DNA of 64,000 bases from positions 90,520,001-90,584,000 of the forward strand of contig NC_086373.1 in the NCBI RefSeq assembly GCF_036588685.1, written 5' to 3'. A program made the position numbers and the translations under genes. Shown in pieces: positions 1 to 39,928 of this stretch. A model generated the notes under the pieces. It saw only the letters and a program-made list of their open reading frames with translations, searched no databases and was not told where the DNA came from. This DNA is from Mytilus trossulus. Taxonomy: Eukaryota. Within the stretch, counting starts at the first letter, position 1. Each line of letters opens with the position of its first letter.

Positions 1-630
1 AGCACGTTTTAAAAGTAAGCATACATGTAATGAAACAACATTTGTGTGATACATTTTCCTTTTTTTTTTAAATTCTATATCCTTGAAAGGCAAAAAAAAA
101 TAATCAGTCTTTCAATAGTATACATGTACATTGTACCTGCAAATTTGATTTTTGTTAGGCCTTACATGATGTATGACATTTCTATTCTTTTAACATGGTT
201 AAGGAACTGAAAAAAGGCATATTTCTCTTTCTCTTTCTCATATTCAATGACTTTTTCCTACTCCCAACCTTTTTTTGTAAAATGTACAGAATGCAATTAG
301 TGTTATTGTGCCATCCACTATTAGTTTATCAGGTAAATGAGTATGCACCAATGTAAAGAATAAACTAAATGTTCTTATTATTTATCAATAGAGTCAACTG
401 GAAAGTATAGTAAAGAATTATTTGCAAAGTATAAAGATAAACTGCTAGAGATTGGAAAACAAGGTCCTGTGTTAGTTCATTGTGCCAGTGGAAAGAGAGT
501 TGGTAAGGTTTTTGCTTATAGACACTAACAAATTTTGATTACCTATCTTTGTCAATATCATAGTAAAAGTGACAATAATTTTTAAAAAAGTCCTGCTTTT
601 AGTGCTTAATATGATTAGGGTAATGCAGAT

Positions 631-1037: not shown

Positions 1038-1410
1038 AAGTTTGTTCAAAAGTTTGCAATTAGGAATACACAATCCCTATATGTAATAAAACAATTCAAT
1101 GTAATAAACATCAAAATACAGATATAAAGGTGTTATTTTGCCTCACTTTACTTTTACAAAATAAAAAACAATAAAATGTACCATTTCATATTTATATCCC
1201 TTTATTAGGTATGTGTCTAGATGATAGATAAAAAAAGTGAATAAATAAAATATTTAATGAATGATTACAATAAGGCTAATAAAAACCATGTTGAGTTTGA
1301 TTTTTTCATTGTTTTTTTAAATTGTGTGCCATTTGTAATAACTATTTATTACGAAACTAATGATGTGGTCTAAAAAGAGACTAAAAGTAAATTTCAAGCA
1401 TATTTTTCAG

Positions 1411-1580
1411 CATTTATGGCAGTCCTCGCAGCAGCCTTACAACATGAGAAAGATTTTAAGTGGGCACTAAAAAGAATCAATGAACTAGGATTTGAAGTGA
1501 GTCGAACCAAGAACAGAGATGTTTATGAGATGTACTCTGCTTGGCTAAATCCAGATCATGGTAATAAAACAGAGTTATGA
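1411..1580 (+). CDS. Terminal coding exon of a DUF442-like protein, paralog A (upstream exons lie outside the window); C-terminus KTEL
   Basis: TTTTTCAG acceptor at 1403-1410, phase 1; translates (A)FMAVLAAALQHEKDFKWALKRINELGFEVSRTKNRDVYEMYSAWLNPDHGNKTEL*; clearly homologous to exon 39780-39928 (AFIGVLAAALQYNKDLPWALKRINELGF). Confidence 0.85.
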
Positions 1581-31029: not shown

Positions 31030-31639
31030 TATTCTTAAGGGCTAATTCAGTTCTTTGTTTTTATTATTTCTCAGACTTGGCAAAATGGAGATGCAACTTT
31101 AAAAAAAAATTTAAGTAAGGCAAAGGATTGTAAGAACTGTTTCACAAAGCAATACAAACTGAAACAATCTTTCATGGGACCAAAATTTCGCTTTAAGAAA
31201 TTCGTGCGACTTTAAAAATTCGGTATGTTCAATAACCACAGGTAAGTCAGAATTTATTTTTTGTAAGGAGAAAGAAGCATGATAAGCATGAAAAGTAGTT
31301 GTAAGAGAATCAAAAAAGATATAGTAAAAAAATCAACAAAATGAGTGTTACGTTTCTAAAGCCGTTCAGTATAGTTGACATACTGTTTTACTCTATGCTT
31401 ATCGAAAACAGATCAAAATACAAAAACTAAACATTATTCAAAGAAACATTAAAAATAGGTCAAGGTAAGATTATCGAACAGACATATGCACATAATAAAT
31501 AATACATACACCAAATATCTTACTTAAAACTTTAAAAGTTAACTCGTTGTAATTACTTAGCTAAGTCTTAGTAGAAGAAGTAGCAAAGTCGTTAAATGAG
31601 TTGTTACAACGAGTTATCACAAACGTTATGATGACTTGA

Positions 31640-32308
31640 GGTGGTATGGGAGTCTAAAATAAAAATGATAGAACTTGTTCATACTTTGACAAAACGTAGT
31701 ATCTATTGATTATATATTTTGAAAAATATAACTAAAATGATAGGTCACCGCGCATTTTCTCATGCTACAGGATGTGACAAAATGACACATTTTGAATGGA
31801 TTATACAGGAAAAAACACCATTTTGTGATTAGAAAATAAACAAAATGATAGAATTGTAAAATACTTAAGGAAAAGATAGCTTTCATACAATGCTTTGAGA
31901 ATATCAAAAGAAAAGATAGGGTCACCGTACGTTTTTTTCTGGCTAAAATACAAAATAGGAAAATTCCATGTAGAATCCTTCAGAAAAATTAACTGTTTTA
32001 GAGTTACCTCCCCTTAAAATGACAATTTACAAAATAATCAAAACAACCAAAACTAATCAACATTTGCAAAAATATTAATATTTATAAGTTATATTCTTAT
32101 CAATTGGTTCTTTTAAATGAAAATTCACATTAAATGTCTGCATTCCTGCATCAAATTTAGCTAACTTGATAGAAAATCTGGACCTTTGGTCCTCTTTTTT
32201 TTTACATTCCAAGATGCGCAAGATCATATTCATTGCGAAGTGCTCCTTTGAAGGAGGGGTTTCCTAAAACAGATTCAGATACAGATGGCGGAAGACACCC
32301 ATACCACC
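31640..32308. mobile_element. TIR MITE, Kolobok-like (TTAA target)
   Basis: GGTGGTATGGGAGTCT / AGACACCCATACCACC; flanks TTGA and TTAA. Confidence 0.7.
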
Positions 32309-32848
32309 TTAAAAACAAAACTCAACTCCAGTCTGACACTAACCGGACTCCGTAGTAATGAATTTGACATGATTGCATGTGCGCCTCGATTTAAGCGCTC
32401 AATAGACAGTTTATGGTTTAAACTTGATCTGTATAGTGCCCGTATAAATTTATCTCCAAACATATAAAACATCAATGAAATTGAAATGATGACATTGAAA
32501 GTATATGAATTTTGATCAAGCACATAAAGAACAAACATGAAATTAATATATGATCTTTCAAAAACTTTATTGGTACATGTGTTTAAACAATAAAAAAAAA
32601 GAATAATGACGGCTCTAGTCAAATATTTCATAATTCATATAACTTACCACTTTAATATATCTATCCGAAAAACTCACTTCGATATATCAGACGAAGTTGT
32701 TTACATATCATAATCCTTTATTGATTTTACTTTATGACTGCCTCAGCATGCCATACAAATTTAAATCTCTGTTATGAAAGCAATAGGTCACGGAGGTCAT
32801 ATATTTATCATCATTGACTATATTATAAGTGCGCAATTCACTAGCATA

Positions 32849-33926
32849 ATGGTTGTTAGAATAGCAAAGAGGAATACAGCAGTTGTTCAGTATGGAATTT
32901 TCTTTTTTCGCTCTATGTCGTCAGGAGGTGTCGATTTTCGCCTTGATACTTTGTCCCCAAGAAGTGCTCCTGGATTCAAATCATCAAAGAAATTATGGTG
33001 GGCAAAAGAAGTGACACCAAAACTTTATGTTGCTGGAGGATTAACAGAAACGCAAATAAAATACGCACATGATGGAGGATTTAATGGCGTTATATCTCTA
33101 TACCAAGAAAACGACCCTGGTCAGTTTGGGGGTGAACAACTAGCATCTGTATTAGATGCCAAATATGCTGCAAAGATTGCCGGTCTTCAGTTTGATGCCA
33201 TTCTGAAAGAGAACGAAGACTGGGCTTGTGTTAAAGCAGTTAAGAAACTAACCCACTCAATTATTGAAATGGAGAACCCAATTTTGCTCTATGGCAGTCA
33301 ACCACAAGCTGTAGCTTTTACAACATTATTGCATACGGCTCACATGTCAAAACTGGACTCTAAATACGAACCAAAAGTTAACAGTGAGAAATTCTATAAA
33401 ATGAGTGCTCTAATGGGAATGGATTTCACAGCAGATAAGTTGAAATCGGTTGTTGCAGAAATAACAGGTGAGCCAATCGTTAGTAACCCACCAAAATGTG
33501 ATGCATATCAAAATTGGTTAGGATATTGGCTTGCTCATCCTGTGTATAAGAATTGGTTTACTGCCGGTCAGATTAGAAGGGGGCATTTAAAGGAACTGGA
33601 AGTTCATGGATTTAAATCAGTCATCAACATGCGGATGGGTAAAACTTTGGACAGCAATCCTTCACAAGAGACTGTAAACCTCATCAACATACCAGACAAC
33701 GTCAATACTTATGACGAGAACTATAACCCTGTGCGACAAACACAATCGACTTTGGAAAAAGTGGTCTTAGATCCAGCCTTGGACAGAAAACACATATCTC
33801 CTTCATCAATGGTTAATTATGAAACCCAGAACGCCGAGGAGTATGGTGACGAAATTGGCTTTAATGAAGAAATTGAAAGCAAACATTTTAAGGAATCATC
33901 ATTGAAATATTACCATTTACCTTTAG
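32849..33926 (+). CDS. Tandem DUF442/Blh-like protein B, coding exon 1
   Basis: Within ORF 32774-33943; preferred ATG at 32849, just after TATAAG at 32824; two repeats of V...L/W(Y/F)xAGx(L/I)...GFxxVI(S/N)(L/M)...GL/SL(Q/K)(F/Y); donor G|GTATG at 33927. Confidence 0.85.
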
Positions 33927-34421
33927 GTATGGTTGCTTTTTAATCTTACAAATTTAAGAATTTCTAAAAATAACATTTAAAGTGAAGTGAATATTATAGA
34001 AAAAAAGACGAAAAAAATGTTTTTGAATGTATGCGCTTTTATTTTATTTGCAATAAGGTGAAATGAATGTCCAGTATGAAATTTAGGTAAAATTTCTCCT
34101 GAAGTAAATCAAAGGTCCCGTATTAAAGAAAAAAACATTGAAATTACTGCTCCATTATTAACTGTTAAACATTGTTTATAACCATAGTTACAACTTTTTA
34201 ATATGTTTACAAAACATTTGATATTTGCATCATAAATTTCTACATGCTCTGGTTGTCAAGCTTTATTTCTTTCATTTTTAAATCAACTTCATTTATAACT
34301 TTTTCAGCTTACCAGCTAAAGCAAATGAAGTAATATTCCTAAATGTGCACCAGTATTCACGGATTATTAGTTTTCCATACTATATTTGCATATTTAAAAT
34401 TAAGATAAAATTATATTTCAG

Positions 34422-34532
34422 ATTTAAATGTAACATACAGCGCAGATGTATTTCAACAGTACAAGGACAAGCTACTAGAAATAGGACGAGACGGTCCAGT
34501 TTTGTTTCATTGTGCTATAGGAAAAAGAGCTG
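34422..34532 (+). CDS. Tandem DUF442-like protein B, exon 2 (putative active site HCAIGKRA)
   Basis: TTTCAG acceptor, GTAAAT donor, 111 nt, phase 1-1; DLNVTYSADVFQQYKDKLLEIGRDGPVLFHCAIGKRA. Confidence 0.9.
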
Positions 34533-34707
34533 GTAAATATTAATAGACCATGAAAATATATTATTTGCTCATTCTAATTTTCATTCAGTGATGAGGTCAA
34601 CTAGAGTCATTAACCTGGAGTCAAACGGCCATGATACATAAAGATAACATGGCCATAATCAAGGTCAACTACCAACAAAAAGTCATAGGGCAGAACAATT
34701 TGTTTTT

Positions 34708-35033
34708 TTTTATGCCCCACCTACCGATAGGTAAAGGGCATTATGTTTTATTGTCTGTGTGTCCGTTTGTCCGTCCGTCGTTACTCGTACCGTTTGTCGT
34801 ACCGTCCGTTCGTTCGTCCGTCCGTCTGTCCTGCTTCAGTTCAAAGTTTTTGGTCGAGGTTGTTTTTGATGAAGCTGAAGTCCAATCAACTTCAAACTTA
34901 GTCACATGTTGCTTATGTTATGATCTTTCTAATTTTTAAGCCAAGTTTTACTTTTGACCAAATTTCACGGTCCATTGAACATGGAAAATGATAGTGCGAG
35001 TGGGGCATCCGTGTACTTTGGACACATTCTTGT
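34708..35033 (+). mobile_element. Short pearl/HINE-type element
   Basis: TTTATGCCCCAC 5' subTIR, (GTCC)n-like microsatellite, 3' GTGGGGCAT plus a short palindrome. Confidence 0.75.
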
Positions 35034-35420
35034 TATCCTTTATCTTTGTAAAAACCCATAATTGTTTGTGTCTTACTGACAAATATATCTAATAGAAACA
35101 ACATGTGTTTATGATTTATCATTACCCATCAATTTCTAGTTTACTTTTTTCAATCTCGGTCAACGATACTATAATGCATGATAGTTGCACCATGCGTTTT
35201 TTGAGGTTCCTTTACCTTCTGACAAATATGGCCGTGTTGACTCCTATTATTTTTTGTTTATCTTAGTTTAGACTAACGTGTGCACCCAGTAATGTTTATG
35301 GCTGCACATATGGTCATACTGCAGATAACCTGAATGCATTCTTTGGAAGAACCTTAGTCCTAATGACAACAGGAAATTAAAAAAAAAGAGTTTTCATCTC
35401 GAGAATGTGGCCCAAGTTAA

Positions 35421-37146
35421 TTTTTATACGACCGCATTCAAATTTTTCGTCGTATATTGCTATCACGTTGGCGTCGTCGTCTGCGTCGTCGTCGTCGTCG
35501 TCCGAATACTTTGAGTTTTCGCACTCTAACTTAAGTAAAAGTGAATAGAAATCTTTGAAATTTAAACACAAGGTTTATGACCACAAAATGAAGGTTGGTA
35601 TTGATTTTGGGAGTTTTGGTCCCAACATTTTAGGAATTAGGGGCCAAAAAGGGCCCAAATAAGCATTTTCTTGGTTTTCGCACTATAACTTTAGTTTAAG
35701 TTAATAGAAATCTATGAAATTTTGACACAAGGTTTATGACCACAAAAGAAAGGTGGGGATTGATTTTGGGAGTTTTGGTTTCATCAGTTTAGGAATTAGG
35801 GGCCAAAAAAGGGCCCAAATAAGCATTATTCTTGGTTTTTGCACAATAACTTTAGTTTAAGTAAATAGAAATCAATAAAATTGAAACACAATGTTTATGA
35901 CCACAAAAGGAAGGTTGGTATTGATTTTGGGAGTTTAGGTCCCAACAGTTTAGGAATTAGGGGCCAAAAAGGTACCCAAATAAGCATTTTTCTTGGTTTT
36001 CGCACCATAATGTTAGTATAAGTAAATAGACATCTATGAAATTTAAACACAAGGTTTATGATCATAAAAGGAAGGTTGGTATTGATTTTGGGAGTTTTGG
36101 TCCCAACAGAATAAGGGGCCCAAAGGGTCCAAAATTAAACTTTGTTTGATTTCATCAAAAATTAAATAATTGGGGTTCTTTGATATGCCGAATCTTACTG
36201 TGTATGTAGATTCTTAACTTTTGGTCCCGTTTTCAAATTGGTCTACATTAAGGTCCAAATGGTCCAAAATTAAACTTAGTTTGATTTTGACAAAAAATGA
36301 ATGGGTTGGGTTCTTTGATATGCTGAATCTAAAAATGTACTTAGATTCTTGATTATTGGCCCAGTTTTCAAGTTGGTTAAAATCGGGGTCCAAAATTAAA
36401 CTTTGTTTGATTTCATCAAAAATTGAATAAATGAGGTTCTTTGATATGCCAAATCTAACTGTGTATGTAGATTCTTCATTTTTGGTCCTGTTTTCAAATT
36501 GGTCTACATTAAAGTCCAAAGGGTCCAAAATTAAACTTATTTTGATTTTAACAAAAATTGAAATCTTGGGGTTCTTTGATATGCTGAATCCAAACATGTA
36601 CTTAGATTTTTGATTATGGGCCCAGTTTTCAAGTTGGTCTAAATCAGGATCTAAAATTATTATATTAAGTATTGTGCAATAGCAAGTCTTTTCAATTGCA
36701 CAGTATTGCGCAATGTCAAGAAATATCTAATTGCACAATATTGTGAAATAGCATTTTTTTTTAATTAGAGTTATCTTTCTTTGTCCAGAATAGTAAGCAA
36801 GAAATATGTGCATTAGCAAGATTTTTTTTTTAATTGGAGTTATCTTTCTTTGTCCAGAATCAACTTAAATCTTTGTTATATACAATATACAATGTACATT
36901 CACTTTTTACTACCAACTGATAAATTAAAATAATCTTTACCATTCAGTGATAACAAGCAGTTTTTTTACATCTTAATATTTTATGATGTATTTAAATGAG
37001 TAGTTATTGTTGCAAACTCCATTAGAAATTTTAATTGAGATTAGTTTTGGAATAAGGGAAAGGGGGATGTGATTAAAAAAATTGGGTTCAATTTTTATAC
37101 GACCGCAAATTTTGAAAAAATTTCGTCGTATATTGCTATCACGTTG

Positions 37147-37193
<47 letters not shown>

Positions 37194-39348
37194 CGAATAC
37201 TTTTAGTTTTCGCACTCTAACTTTAGTAAAAGTGAATAGAAATCTATGAAATTTTAACACAAGGTTTATGACCATAAAAGGAAGGCTGGTATTGATTTTG
37301 GGAGTTTTGGTCCCAACATTTTAGGAATTAGGGGCCAAAAAGGGCCCAAATAAGCATTTTCTTGGTTTTCGCACTATAACTTTAGTTTAAGTGAATAGAA
37401 ATCTATGAAATTTTGACACAAGGTTTATGACCGCAAAAGAAAGGTTGGGATTGATTTTGGGAGTTTTGGTTTCAACAGTTTAGGAATTAGGGGCCAAAAA
37501 AGGGCCCAAATAAGCATTATTCTTGGTTTTCACACAATAACTTTAGTTAAAGTAAATAGAAATCAATAAAATTTAAACACAATGTTTATGACCACAAAAG
37601 GAAGGTTGGTATTGATTTTGGGAGTTTTGGTCCCAACAGTTTAGGAATTAGGGGCCAAAAAGGGACCCAAATAAGCATTTTTCTTGGTTTTCGCACCATA
37701 GCGTTAGTATAAGTAAATAGAAATCTATGAAATTTAAACACAAGGTTTATGACTATAAAAGGAAGGTTGGTATTGATTTTTGGAGTTTTGGTCCCAACAG
37801 TTAAGGAAAAAGGGGCCCAAAGGGTCCAAAATTAAACTTTGTTTGATTTCATCAAAATTGAATAATTGGGGTTCTTTAATATGCCGAATCTAACTGTGTA
37901 TGTATATTCTTAATTTTTGGTCCCATTTTCAAATTGGTCTATATTAAGGTCCAAAGGGTCCAAAATTAAACTTAGTTTGATTTTAACAAAAATTGAAACC
38001 TTGGGGTTCCTTGATATGCTGAATCTAAAAATGTACTTAGATTTTTGATTATTGGCCCAGTTTTCAAGTTGGCCCAAATCGAGGTCCAAAATTAAACATT
38101 GTTTGATTTCATCAAAAATTGAATAATTGGGTTTCTTTGATATGCCAAATCTAACTGTGTATGTAGATTCTTAATTTTTGGTCCAGTTTTAAAATTGGTC
38201 TAAATAAAAGTGCAAAGGGTCCAAAATTAAACTCAGTTTGATTTTAACAAAAATTAAATTCTTGGGCCTCTTTGATATGCTGAATCTAAACATGTACTTA
38301 GATTTTTGATTTTGGGCCCAGTTTTCAAGTTGGTCCAAATCAGGATCTAAAATTATTATATTAAGTATTGTGCAATAGCAAGTCTTTTCAATTGCACAGT
38401 ATTGCGCAATGGCAAGAAATATCTAATTTCACAATATTGTGAAATAGCAATTTTTTTTTTAATTAAGAGTTATCTTTCTTTGTCCAGTATAGTAAGCAAG
38501 AAATATCTGCAAGAATTTTTTTTTAATTGGAGTTATCTTTCTTTGTCCAGAATCAACTTAAATCTTTGTTATATACAATATACAATGTATATTCACTTTT
38601 TACTACCAACTGATAAATTTAAATAATCTTTACCATTCAGTGATAACAAGCAGTTTTTTTACATCTTAATATTTTATGATGTATTTAAATGAGTAGTAAT
38701 TGTTGCAAACTCCATTAGAATATTTTAATTGAAATTAGTTTTGGAATAAGGGAAAGGGGGATGTGAATAAAAAATTGGGTTCAATTTTTCTCATTTGAAA
38801 TTTCATAAATAAAAAGAAAATTTCTTCAAACATTTTTTTGAGAGGATTAATATTCAACAGCATAGTGAATTGCTCTAAGAGAAATCAAAAATTTTAAGTT
38901 CATTTGAATACATTCATTCTGTGTCAGAAACCTATGCTGTGTCAACTATTTAATCACAATCCAAATTTAGAGCGGAATCCAGCTTGAATGTTGTGTCCAT
39001 ACTTGCCCCAACCGTTCAGGGTTCAACCTCTGCGGTCGTATAAAGCTACGCCCTGCGGAGCATCTGGTTCTCATTTGAAATTTCATAATTAAAAAGAAAA
39101 TTTCTTCAAACATTTTTTTGAGAGGATTAATATTCAACAGCATAGTGAATTGCTCTAAGAGAAAATAAAAAAAATTAAGTTCAATAGAACACATTCATTC
39201 TGTGTCAGAAACCTATGCTGTGTCAACTATTTAATCACAATCCAAATTTAGAGCTGAATCCAGCTTGAATGTTGTGTCCATACTTGCCCCAACCGTTCAG
39301 GGTTCAACATCTGCAGTCGTATAAAGCTACACCCTGCGGAGCATCTGT
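35421..39348 (+). mobile_element. Two copies of one HINE family; the second (37092-39068) is nested in the first; both lie in intron 2 of the DUF442-like gene
   Basis: Both start TTTTTATACGACCGC..CGTCGTATATTGCTATCACGTTGGCGTCGTC; two 3' ends TGC(G/A)GTCGTATAAAGCTAC..GCGGAGCATCTG at 39031-39068 and 39312-39348; internal ~160-bp and ~260-bp tandem units. Confidence 0.9.
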
Positions 39349-39779
39349 TTTTTTTCAATATAGAATTACCGTCTTGCGCATCTACAAATCTAGTACAATG
39401 AATAATTACAAAGAATAGATCTTTGTAAAAAAAAAAAAAATTCGCAACATTAGGCACCTTTGATTTGTATAGTATATTAATTCTCCCGTATATACTACCG
39501 TATCTAGCGAGTTATTTTACCTGGTGTAAAATTTCGCGATTTTCATTTAATAAGGTATATGAAATATTTTTGCGATTATTATTTTGGCGGATTCAAAACT
39601 TTTCTCAATACCTCTGCTTGTGCACTTTTCAATTGACGGAATTTATTTTGGCGATTTGTTCTATCCGTGAATATTTACACTCCGCTAATATAATCCTCTA
39701 TACGGTAAAATATGATGACATCCAAATTGCATTTTAATTCACATAAACACGTTATAGTATCTAAACTGATTTATTTCAG

Positions 39780-39928
39780 CATTTATTGGCGTCCTGGCAG
39801 CGGCATTACAGTACAATAAAGATTTACCGTGGGCTTTGAAGCGCATAAATGAGCTCGGATTTACTGTCAACGAAACAAGTTTTAGTGATGTCTACAAGAT
39901 GTACAATGACGTGCTTAAGAATACATGA
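39780..39928 (+). CDS. Tandem DUF442-like protein B, exon 3 (whole protein ~445 aa)
   Basis: TTTCAG acceptor, phase 1; AFIGVLAAALQYNKDLPWALKRINELGFTVNETSFSDVYKMYNDVLKNT*; AATAAA at 40151. Confidence 0.9.

What the first reader, a model, noticed from the sequence alone, without database searches (positions are those of the whole stretch)
32849..39928. Spliced animal gene encoding a tandem DUF442/Blh-type protein with a mitochondrial-like presequence: candidate extra component of mitochondrial sulfide handling
Seen: three phase-compatible exons give a ~445-aa protein with two copies of one domain. The second copy reads ..WFTAGQI..GFKSVINMR..LKYYHLPL..GPVLFHCAIGKRA..WALKRINELGF. Its loop is C-X4-R (CxxGxR), not the C-X5-R of tyrosine or dual-specificity phosphatases. 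The N-terminus MVVRIAKRNTAVVQYGIFFFRSMSS is basic, has no acidic residues and ends in an R-x-M-S-S cleavage-like site. Established: the pattern fits bacterial DUF442 (PF04273/TIGR01244; GPVLAYCRSGTRS). That domain has rhodanese-type sulfurtransferase activity when fused to sulfide:quinone oxidoreductase, or to the ETHE1-like persulfide dioxygenase in Blh. Animal mitochondrial sulfide oxidation is normally described as SQOR + ETHE1 + TST. Inference: this may be an uncharacterised, possibly horizontally acquired and since intronised, mitochondrial sulfurtransferase in a sulfide-exposed invertebrate.
Basis: partly seen in the sequence, partly recalled or inferred. Interest (0 to 1): 0.85.

Follow-up and report, generated by a model that had tools for sequence, protein, structure and literature searches.

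The report
Mussel tandem DUF442-like enzyme, retargeted paralogue
This is a real, transcribed mussel gene for an uncharacterised two-domain cysteine enzyme of the bacterial-type DUF442 kind; it belongs to an old secretory-pathway family of marine invertebrates, and this copy has swapped its ER signals for a mitochondrion-like leader, with its chemistry (sulfur transfer or phosphatase) still untested.

Summary
Three exons (32849-33926, 34422-34532, 39780-39928) with GT..AG introns in matching phase encode about 445 aa. Spliced transcript contigs from four studies carry the exon 1/2 junction. The two halves are homologous PTP-fold domains, and PF04273 (DUF442) is the nearest Pfam family. The second domain has an invariant C-X4-R loop.

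- The first domain of this gene has lost both Cys and Arg, so it is a conserved pseudo-domain.
- The family is not a recent bacterial import. It occurs with the same architecture in molluscs, annelids and hemichordates, and its tree follows the species tree. No prokaryotic relative was found.
- The family is ancestrally secretory, with a signal peptide plus a KDEL-like tail or a hydrophobic C-terminal tail. The window gene belongs to a mytilid paralogue clade that lost the tail, lost the hydrophobic signal core and gained a basic, acid-free N-terminus. That suggests mitochondrial retargeting, which I could not test.

Sulfurtransferase activity is plausible by analogy with Blh and SQR-DUF442. 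C-X4-R does not exclude phosphatase chemistry, because NMA1982 is a weak one.

The scan had already flagged the ER-type paralogue 31 kb upstream (s1-829937).

The parts
32799..32848 (+). Minimal 5' UTR seen in transcript contigs. It contains no ATG. The upstream in-frame ATG at 32774 lies outside every contig.
   Evidence: table 8: contigs start at 32799, 32838, 32847 and 32855. Sequence read.
32849..33926 (+). Exon 1: codons 1-359 plus the first base of codon 360.
   Evidence: 93% identity to P0001; covered by spliced contigs in 4 runs.
32849..32923 (+). N-terminal leader, residues 1-25: net charge +4, no acidic residue, weak hydrophobic core, R-S-M-S at residues 21-24. Read as a mitochondrial-type presequence (inferred).
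   Evidence: metrics against signal-peptide paralogues; alignment.
32984..33493 (+). Domain 1 (about residues 46-215): PTP/DSP fold of the DUF442 type, with Cys and Arg lost (L-L-Y-G-S-Q-P-Q). A pseudo-domain under purifying selection.
   Evidence: (3gxh Z 13.5 and 2f46 Z 13.2 on model residues 44-208), (dN/dS 0.17).
33524..33926 (+). First part of domain 2 (residues 226-359), which continues in exons 2 and 3.
   Evidence: homologous to domain 1; Tk-PTP Z 12.8 on model residues 223-445.
33635..33898 (+). Conserved insertion in domain 2 (about residues 263-350), absent from domain 1. Mostly loop in the model but with many invariant residues.
   Evidence: gap of about 62 columns against domain 1; invariant P271, Q273, E274, T287, Y288, R296, Q297, N323, E325, G333, D334.
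33927..34421 (+). Intron 1 (495 nt, GT..AG, phase 1).
   Evidence: table 5: the junction is present in 4 runs of 4 studies.
34422..34532 (+). Exon 2 (codons 360-397, split at both ends).
34508..34528 (+). Active-site loop H-C-A-I-G-K-R (Cys390, Arg395): C-X4-R, invariant in the family.
   Evidence: same loop length as the DUF442 structure 3gxg; a true DSP needs a one-residue gap.
34533..39779 (+). Intron 2 (5247 nt, GT..AG, phase 1). It is swollen by a tandem duplication of about 1.69 kb of satellite-like repeats.
   Evidence: In the near-identical copy at C1:81.3 Mb, exons 2 and 3 lie only about 1.3 kb apart.
39780..39928 (+). Exon 3 (codons 397-445 and TGA). It ends in ...L-K-N-T with no KDEL-like tail.
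   Evidence: 91% identity to P0001 residues 396-442.
346..507 (+). Penultimate coding exon of the neighbouring ER-type paralogue. Its first exon lies just before the window.
1407..1580 (+). Last coding exon of the neighbouring paralogue, ending in N-K-T-E-L then stop.

Best explanation
The locus is a functional three-exon mussel gene. It encodes a protein of about 445 aa made of two homologous PTP-fold domains of the DUF442/BLH_phosphatase kind. The N-terminal domain has lost its nucleophile and acts at most as a scaffold or substrate-binding module. The C-terminal domain keeps an invariant H-C-x-x-G-x-R (C-X4-R) loop and a conserved insertion of about 60-90 residues; it is the catalytic unit.

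The gene is a mytilid-specific paralogue of an old family of marine invertebrates (molluscs, annelids, hemichordates). Other members of that family carry a signal peptide plus a KDEL-like tail or a hydrophobic C-terminal anchor. After duplication, this lineage lost the ER tail and the hydrophobic signal core. It gained a basic, acid-free leader with an R-x-(M/L/I)-S motif.

Shown: gene structure, expression, fold, domain duplication, loss of the domain 1 Cys, family distribution and phylogeny, and the loss of ER signals.

Inferred: the leader imports the protein into mitochondria. There, Cys390 would carry a persulfide and pass sulfane sulfur between thiosulfate or persulfides and thiol or sulfite acceptors, as the bacterial DUF442 domains of Blh and SQR do.
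For: Gene and expression. The spliced junction is in 4 runs of 4 studies, and the first AUG of the observed transcripts is 32849.

Purifying selection: dN/dS against the chromosome 6 paralogue is 0.17 overall, 0.17 for domain 1 and 0.12 for the domain 2 part.

Fold and family:
- The AF2 model of the 93%-identical proxy has pLDDT 81 and pTM 0.77.
- Domain 1 is best matched by the DUF442 structures 3gxh and 2f46 (Z 13.5 and 13.2).
- PF04273 is the commonest Pfam match, 12 of 17 and 17 of 21 members.
- The NCBIfam Blh model matches domain 2 of the proxy at E 1.4e-8.
- The loop has the same length as in 3gxg.

Internal duplication.

Distribution and tree.

Retargeting:
- All 13 full-length mollusc sequences outside clade A and Patella, plus one Owenia protein, end in x-x-E-L and start with hydrophobic signal peptides.
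- The 9 mytilid clade A rows scored have net charge +4 to +8, no acidic residue in the first 25 residues and a maximal 10-residue hydropathy of 0.97-1.84. The others score 1.98-4.12.

Sulfur transfer by DUF442: PMC5823870, PMC9163753 and PMC6441731.

The residue after H-L-P-L, where DSPs place their general acid, is not conserved (D, S, E, A or V).
Against: - No targeting predictor and no localisation data were available. The window gene's own leader has a moderately hydrophobic stretch (A-V-V-Q-Y-G-I-F-F-F, hydropathy 1.79), so a weak signal peptide and secretion are not excluded.
- Contigs cannot fix the transcription start. A start upstream of 32774 would add 25 residues.
- Neither the window's own pieces nor the proxy P0001 reach the PF04273 threshold.
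- For domain 2 the best structural matches are true phosphatases (Tk-PTP, SsoPTP, PTPMT1), tied with DUF442.
- NMA1982 shows that C-X4-R can run a PTP mechanism (PMC10716126).
- No enzymatic or physiological data exist for any eukaryotic member.
Confidence: 0.5

Rival explanations
1. Same gene and fold, but the enzyme is a phosphatase that acts through a Cys-phosphoryl intermediate on a phosphoprotein, phospholipid, inositol phosphate or phospho-sugar. It is not a sulfurtransferase.
For: - Domain 2 is best matched by genuine PTPs and DSPs: Tk-PTP and ShufPTP Z 12.8, SsoPTP 11.9, PTPMT1 11.5.
- There are weak Pfam matches to Y_phosphatase3, PTPlike_phytase and DSPc.
- Foldseek lists the tandem PTP-like phytase and Cdc14 for the whole model.
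- NMA1982, a C-X4-R DUF442 protein, uses a PTP mechanism and is secreted (PMC10716126).
Against: - NMA1982's turnover is about 4e-5 per second, hardly physiological (PMC10716126).
- The two DUF442 domains tested for sulfur transfer are active sulfurtransferases (PMC5823870, PMC9163753).
- The general-acid position is not conserved.
- The loop is one residue shorter than in every phosphatase among the structural matches.
Confidence: 0.28
2. The paralogue is not mitochondrial. Having lost its KDEL-like tail, it is either secreted through a weak signal peptide or stays in the cytosol.
For: - The window gene's leader keeps a 10-residue stretch with hydropathy 1.79 and small residues (S-M-S-S) after it.
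- The leader evolves faster than the rest of the protein (dN/dS 0.44).
- No predictor or experiment was available.
Against: - Sister sequences of the same clade have no hydrophobic core at all: hydropathy 0.97-1.33 in several, with a charged residue every 3-4 positions in P0007 and P0010.
- All 9 scored mytilid clade A members keep a charge of +4 or more and no acidic residue in the first 25 residues, despite about 40% overall divergence.
Confidence: 0.35
3. One reading: a gene acquired horizontally from bacteria and later given introns, now serving as an extra component of mitochondrial sulfide oxidation in a sulfide-exposed animal.
For: - PF04273 is overwhelmingly bacterial, and the nearest protein-language-model clusters are bacterial (a lead only).
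- Members occur in animals of sulfidic habitats: Lamellibrachia, Paralvinella, Capitella and Mya.
Against: - The same two-domain architecture occurs in molluscs, annelids and hemichordates, and the tree follows the species tree.
- A profile search of 1.84 billion representatives gave only 543 matches at E up to 0.001, so bacterial DUF442 is barely within reach.
- No relative was found in one genome per prokaryotic species.
- The ancestral location is secretory, not mitochondrial.
- A very ancient transfer into an early eukaryote or animal cannot be tested with these data.
Confidence: 0.05
4. The protein is a non-catalytic binding or regulatory protein (a pseudo-enzyme). This would extend the decay already seen in domain 1.
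For: Domain 1 has lost Cys and Arg yet is conserved.
Against: Cys390, Arg395, Gly393 and His389 of domain 2 are invariant or nearly so in all full-length mollusc members, and Cys is nearly invariant and Arg invariant in the distant set.
Confidence: 0.08

Closest known systems
Bacterial DUF442 / BLH_phosphatase domain (PF04273, TIGR01244): the N-terminal domain of Blh (Xylella, Agrobacterium) and of Cupriavidus SQR
   Same: PTP-like fold. The active-site loop is C-x-x-G-x-R, one residue shorter than C-X5-R. PF04273 is the best and most frequent Pfam match for the family. NCBIfam Blh and TIGR01244 match at E 1e-8 to 1e-11.
   Different: Here the domain is eukaryotic, duplicated in tandem and not fused to SQR or a persulfide dioxygenase. 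Domain 2 carries a conserved insertion of about 60-90 residues. Scores lie near or below the curated cut-offs. The protein is targeted to the secretory pathway (most of the family) or probably to mitochondria (this copy).
NMA1982 (PDB 2f46) and the Shewanella DUF442 protein (PDB 3gxh/3gxg)
   Same: Closest solved structures to domain 1 (Z 13.2 and 13.5). They share the C-X4-R loop, and 3gxg has H-C-L-A-N-Y-R against the family's H-C-x-S/T-G-Y-R. NMA1982 is secreted, as most of this family probably is.
   Different: They are single-domain bacterial proteins with about 13% identity. NMA1982 was characterised only as a very slow phosphatase.
Tandem PTP-fold proteins with one degenerate domain: Cdc14 (A/B domains), receptor PTP D1-D2, and the tandem PTP-like phytase of Mitsuokella
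   Same: Two PTP-fold domains in one chain, one inactive and one catalytic. These are the top whole-model Foldseek matches.
   Different: TM-scores are low (about 0.25) with rmsd 14-25 A, so the domain arrangement is not the same. All of them have C-X5-R loops and are phosphatases.
Animal mitochondrial sulfurtransferases of the rhodanese fold (TST, MPST)
   Same: The proposed chemistry (a Cys persulfide carrier) and the proposed compartment. This comparison rests on general knowledge and was not tested here.
   Different: The fold is unrelated. Only a weak, sub-threshold Rhodanese Pfam match appears in two paralogues (E 0.005-0.02).

Membership tests
PF04273 BLH_phosphatase (DUF442) | Score at or above Pfam's gathering cut-off (26.1 bits). 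| tested here: inconclusive
   The window's exon pieces and the 93% proxy P0001 give no PF04273 match. Close relatives pass: P0012 39.9 bits (domain 1), P0016 31.1 (domain 2), P0014 29.3, P0053 36.3, P0034 26.3. At E up to 0.01, 12 of 17 and 17 of 21 family members match. Membership therefore rests on transitive homology.
PF04273 BLH_phosphatase (DUF442) | Active-site loop C-x-x-G-x-R (C-X4-R), one residue shorter than the PTP signature. | tested here: met
   Domain 2 has H-C-A-I-G-K-R at 34508-34528. Cys and Arg are invariant. The loop aligns without a gap to H-C-L-A-N-Y-R of 3gxg, whereas a true DSP needs a one-residue gap. Domain 1 of this gene does not meet this feature.
PF04273 BLH_phosphatase (DUF442) | PTP/DSP-like alpha/beta fold closest to solved DUF442 structures. 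| tested here: met
   Domain 1: 3gxh Z 13.5 (rmsd 2.8, 143 of 151 residues) and 2f46 Z 13.2. Domain 2: small PTPs at Z 12.8, within about 1 Z of the DUF442 matches. The fold is met, but specificity for DUF442 over other DSPs is shown only for domain 1.
TIGR01244 / NF040641 (Blh-type sulfur transferase) | Curated score cut-off (85.85 and 625 bits); for Blh, fusion to an ETHE1-like dioxygenase. | tested here: not met
   Best scores are 34-44 bits. There is no dioxygenase domain. The protein is not a Blh or TIGR01244 equivalog, only a distant relative of their domain.
Sulfurtransferase (functional class) | Cys-dependent transfer of sulfane sulfur through an enzyme persulfide. | not testable with these tools
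   Inferred only from Blh and SQR-DUF442 biochemistry (PMC5823870, PMC9163753, PMC6441731).
Mitochondrial matrix protein with a cleavable presequence | Basic, acid-free, amphipathic N-terminus with an R-2/R-3 cleavage motif; demonstrated import. | tested here: inconclusive
   Composition fits: charge +4, no acidic residue in residues 1-25, R-S-M-S at 21-24, conserved in character across the clade. The model predicts a helix at residues 4-23, but at low confidence. No TargetP or MitoFates run and no localisation data.
ER-resident soluble protein (signal peptide + KDEL-type retrieval) | Hydrophobic signal peptide and a C-terminal [KRHQSA]-[DENQ]-E-L-like tetrapeptide. | tested here: not met
   The window gene ends in L-K-N-T and its N-terminal hydropathy is below that of the signal-peptide paralogues. 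The neighbouring paralogue does meet both features.
Classical DSP/PTP phosphatases (PF00782, PF00102) | C-X5-R signature and a conserved general-acid Asp. | tested here: not met
   The loop is C-X4-R. The position after H-L-P-L varies (D, S, E, A, V). DSPc scores lie below its cut-off.

The most novel reading that the evidence does not exclude
Marine invertebrates have an unrecognised DUF442-type sulfurtransferase system with compartment-specific paralogues: ER-lumenal or cell-surface forms, and in mussels a mitochondrial form. The mussel mitochondrial copy would be a fourth, non-rhodanese component of animal mitochondrial sulfide oxidation beside SQOR, ETHE1 and TST. It would have arisen by converting a signal peptide into a mitochondrial presequence.
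Probability: 0.2. Interest if true: 0.8.

Novelty: new variant of a known kind. Interest (0 to 1): 0.55.

Why it matters
DUF442 is known only from bacteria, as a rhodanese-like partner of SQR and persulfide dioxygenase or as a very slow secreted phosphatase. I found no paper describing a eukaryotic member.

This gene shows that animals of three phyla keep a conserved tandem version. In mussels, sister paralogues carry opposite sorting signals: an ER signal and retrieval tail in one, and a mitochondrion-like leader in the other. If the chemistry is sulfur transfer, reactive sulfur handling would be placed in the animal ER or cell surface and, by a non-rhodanese enzyme, in mitochondria. That is relevant to sulfide tolerance in benthic invertebrates.

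The gene pair is also a clean natural case of a signal peptide changing into a presequence-like leader after duplication. The pair sits 31 kb apart on one strand and is easy to test side by side.

Tried and rejected
- Pfam on the three exon pieces gave nothing useful; only exon 2 matched Y_phosphatase3, at E 0.005.
- A profile search of PDB sequences gave no significant hit. The top PCNA and urease rows are noise.
- A six-frame PF04273 search of the window's own genome found nothing, although the genes are there. That search is too insensitive for this family.
With A2 it found no prokaryotic relative.
I could therefore not check the context of the metagenomic single-domain-looking relative P0133. 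hhalign shows that P0133 covers the linker plus domain 2 (E 2e-23), so it is probably an exon-limited gene call on a eukaryotic contig rather than a bacterial donor.
- I considered and rejected the upstream in-frame ATG at 32774 as the start. It is not conserved in orthologues and is not covered by any transcript contig.
- I rejected recent horizontal transfer.
- All full-length analyses used database homologues.
- I could not lay reads on exon 3: the limit is 6 kb and one call. The exon 2/3 junction therefore rests on homology and on contigs that leave the genome exactly at 34532.

Full report
**1. Gene structure and expression**

- An ORF starts at ATG 32849 and runs to a GT donor at 33927.
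- A 111-nt exon (34422-34532) lies between an AG acceptor and a GT donor.
- A last exon (39780-39928) ends in TGA.
- Both junctions are in phase 1, giving 445 codons.

Each in-frame piece was searched by reference. The 93%-identical Mytilus coruscus protein P0001 (448 aa) served as the full-length proxy.

Exons 2 and 3 match P0001 residues 359-397 and 396-442 (E 9e-15 and 1e-19).

Contigs of four public runs from four studies were laid on 31500-37499.
- They join 33926 to 34422, skipping 495 nt with GT..AG ends, so they are spliced RNA.
- Their alignment stops exactly at 34532 and the contigs run on for 23-316 nt. That fits exon 3 and a 3' UTR, which lay outside the stretch I could lay.
- The 5'-most contig starts at 32799. 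There is no ATG between 32799 and 32849.
- The upstream in-frame ATG at 32774 is in no contig and is not conserved in orthologues.
- Contigs cannot define a transcription start, so the start codon is well supported but not proven.

dN/dS against the chromosome 6 paralogue is 0.17 overall, 0.17 for domain 1 and 0.12 for the exon 1 part of domain 2. The gene is under purifying selection.

**2. What the protein is**

The two halves are homologous to each other: hhalign gives probability 96.6% and E 7e-10 over 121 columns. Domain 2 carries an extra block of about 62 columns.

The AlphaFold model of P0001 has mean pLDDT 81 and pTM 0.77.
- Foldseek returns tandem PTP-fold proteins (Cdc14, the tandem PTP-like phytase, PTPRZ D1-D2), but with low TM-scores. 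It also returns single-domain DUF442 structures.
- VIA-align places domain 1 (residues 44-208) on the DUF442 structures 3gxh (Z 13.5, rmsd 2.8, 143 residues) and 2f46 (Z 13.2).
- It places domain 2 (223-445) on small PTPs: Tk-PTP and ShufPTP Z 12.8, SsoPTP 11.9, PTPMT1 11.5.
- These values are close to tied. The fold is PTP/DSP, and fold alone does not separate DUF442 from ordinary phosphatases.

Sequence does separate them to a degree.
- PF04273 is the Pfam family matched by most members: 12 of 17 molluscan and 17 of 21 distant sequences, best E 5.6e-10.
- NCBIfam's Blh and TIGR01244 'sulfur transferase' models match at E 1e-8 to 1e-11, far below their equivalog cut-offs.
- The window's own lineage is the most diverged. 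Its pieces and P0001 do not reach the PF04273 cut-off.

The active-site loop of domain 2, H-C-A-I-G-K-R (34508-34528), is C-X4-R with Gly at +3. Cys and Arg are invariant. A relative's loop aligns without a gap to H-C-L-A-N-Y-R of 3gxg, while a true DSP needs a one-residue gap.

**3.

First, domain 1 of this gene is not an active copy. Most relatives have L-L-H-C-N-R-A-Y-T at that position. The window gene and its whole clade have L-L-Y-G/A/S-S-Q/K-P-Q, with no Cys and no Arg. It is a conserved pseudo-domain.

Second, the family is not a lone or recent acquisition.
- Full-length homologues with the same architecture occur in bivalves (Mytilus, Pinctada, Ylistrum, Mya) and gastropods (Haliotis, Aplysia, Patella).
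- They also occur in annelids (Owenia, Capitella, Lamellibrachia, Paralvinella) and hemichordates (Saccoglossus, Ptychodera, Glandiceps).
- Unnamed metagenome and metatranscriptome sequences also match.
- A maximum-likelihood tree (quick search, SH-aLRT support) recovers hemichordates, then annelids, then a 100%-supported mollusc clade.
- A profile search of 1.84 billion representatives gave only 543 matches at E up to 0.001.
- A pattern scan of one genome per prokaryotic species found no relative.
- Recent horizontal transfer is therefore rejected. A very old transfer cannot be tested here.

Third, the family belongs to the secretory pathway.
- Outside the window's clade and Patella, all 13 full-length mollusc sequences and one Owenia protein begin with a hydrophobic signal peptide. 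They end in x-x-E-L: KDEL, KEEL, RDEL, HEEL, KQEL, KTEL, HLEL or RVEL.
- Hemichordate, Capitella and protist-like members end in a hydrophobic tail instead.
- The gene 31 kb upstream on the same strand is such an ER-type paralogue. It has a signal peptide, and its last exon at 1407-1580 ends in N-K-T-E-L. The scan had already flagged and followed up this paralogue (s1-829937, s1-827209).

**4. The retargeted clade**

In the tree, a 100%-supported mytilid clade splits into the KTEL type (6 rows) and a 100%-supported clade of 11 rows that contains the window gene. Every member of the second clade lacks the E-L tail and the domain 1 Cys.

For the nine mytilid clade members scored, the first 25 residues have net charge +4 to +8 and no acidic residue. 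Maximal 10-residue hydropathy is 0.97-1.84. The signal-peptide members have charge -3 to +3 and hydropathy 1.98-4.12.

An R-x-(M/L/I)-S motif sits at about residues 21-26 throughout the clade. These features persist at about 58% overall identity, although the leader evolves faster than the rest (dN/dS 0.44).

No predictor or localisation data were available. The window gene's own leader is the most hydrophobic of its clade bar one. I put mitochondrial location at about 0.55, with secretion or cytosol as the alternatives.

Patella has an independently duplicated pair without E-L tails, one copy with a basic leader. This hints at a parallel event, which I did not pursue.

**5. Mechanism**

Two bacterial DUF442 domains have been shown to be sulfurtransferases.
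- The Blh domain moves sulfane sulfur from thiosulfate to cyanide or GSH and couples to the fused dioxygenase (PMC5823870).
- The SQR-fused domain of Cupriavidus needs Cys94, carries a persulfide in a basic pocket and limits sulfane-sulfur accumulation (PMC9163753, PMC6441731).

Against this, NMA1982 is also DUF442 with C-X4-R. It uses a PTP mechanism on DiFMUP and is secreted, but its kcat is 4.4e-5 per second (PMC10716126). The short loop therefore does not forbid phosphatase chemistry, though it makes a poor phosphatase in the one case measured.

In the present family, the position where DSPs carry the general acid is variable. That leans toward sulfur transfer.

My estimates are sulfurtransferase about 0.5, phosphatase about 0.3 and other or non-catalytic about 0.2.

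The conserved insertion in domain 2 and the retained pseudo-domain probably shape substrate access, as in Cdc14. This is inference only.

**6. Verdict**

The thing is a new eukaryotic, tandem, compartment-targeted variant of a known domain kind. I found no paper on it.

It is interesting mainly as a testable pair of oppositely targeted paralogues and as a candidate non-rhodanese sulfurtransferase in animals. Its chemistry and location remain untested, and the scan had already found the sister gene on adjacent DNA.

Noticed in passing
G000:C1:81335829-81364308 (loci L001, L004, L008, L011, L012), compared with window 1-39928: The whole two-gene block (ER-type paralogue plus this gene) is present a second time, about 9 Mb away on the same contig and in inverted orientation. 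Exon 1 is 99.4% identical at the protein level, with dS 0.022. This is either a very recent segmental duplication or an uncollapsed haplotype. Exons 2 and 3 lie only about 1.3 kb apart in that copy.
   Followed up: partly
window 35466-38850 (inside intron 2): A segment of about 1.69 kb is duplicated in tandem (95% identity). It is itself built of units of about 161 nt and 261 nt. These repeats occur at very high depth in RNA contigs of all four runs, so they are a transcribed high-copy satellite or transposon family. A trinucleotide run at about 37070-37275 encodes poly-Arg or poly-Ser ORFs.
   Followed up: partly
G000:C6:38610660-38615484 (loci L003, L006, L009): A third copy of the leader-type paralogue (83% identity to the proxy) lies on another contig. 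It is the orthologue of the annotated M. edulis, M. galloprovincialis and M. californianus genes. Its exon 1 ORF appears to contain a short internal repeat of the last 45 codons.
   Followed up: no
Patella caerulea genes SNE40_014479/014480 (P0023, P0169) and P. vulgata P0024: This is an independent tandem pair in limpets. Both copies lack the E-L tail, and one has a basic N-terminus (charge +4). It may be a parallel loss of ER retention.
   Followed up: no
proteins P0092, P0098, P0102, P0115, P0118, P0120, P0128, P0138: A shorter subfamily (about 370-420 aa) of unnamed origin has a signal peptide, H-C-x-S-G-Y-R in domain 2, and a conserved C-terminus ending in L-G-C or L-K-C. The meaning of the terminal Cys is unknown.
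   Followed up: no
window 32760-32766: A TTTAAAT element lies about 33 nt upstream of the 5'-most transcript contig start (32799). This would fit a TATA-type promoter placing the upstream ATG (32774) outside the mRNA.
   Followed up: no
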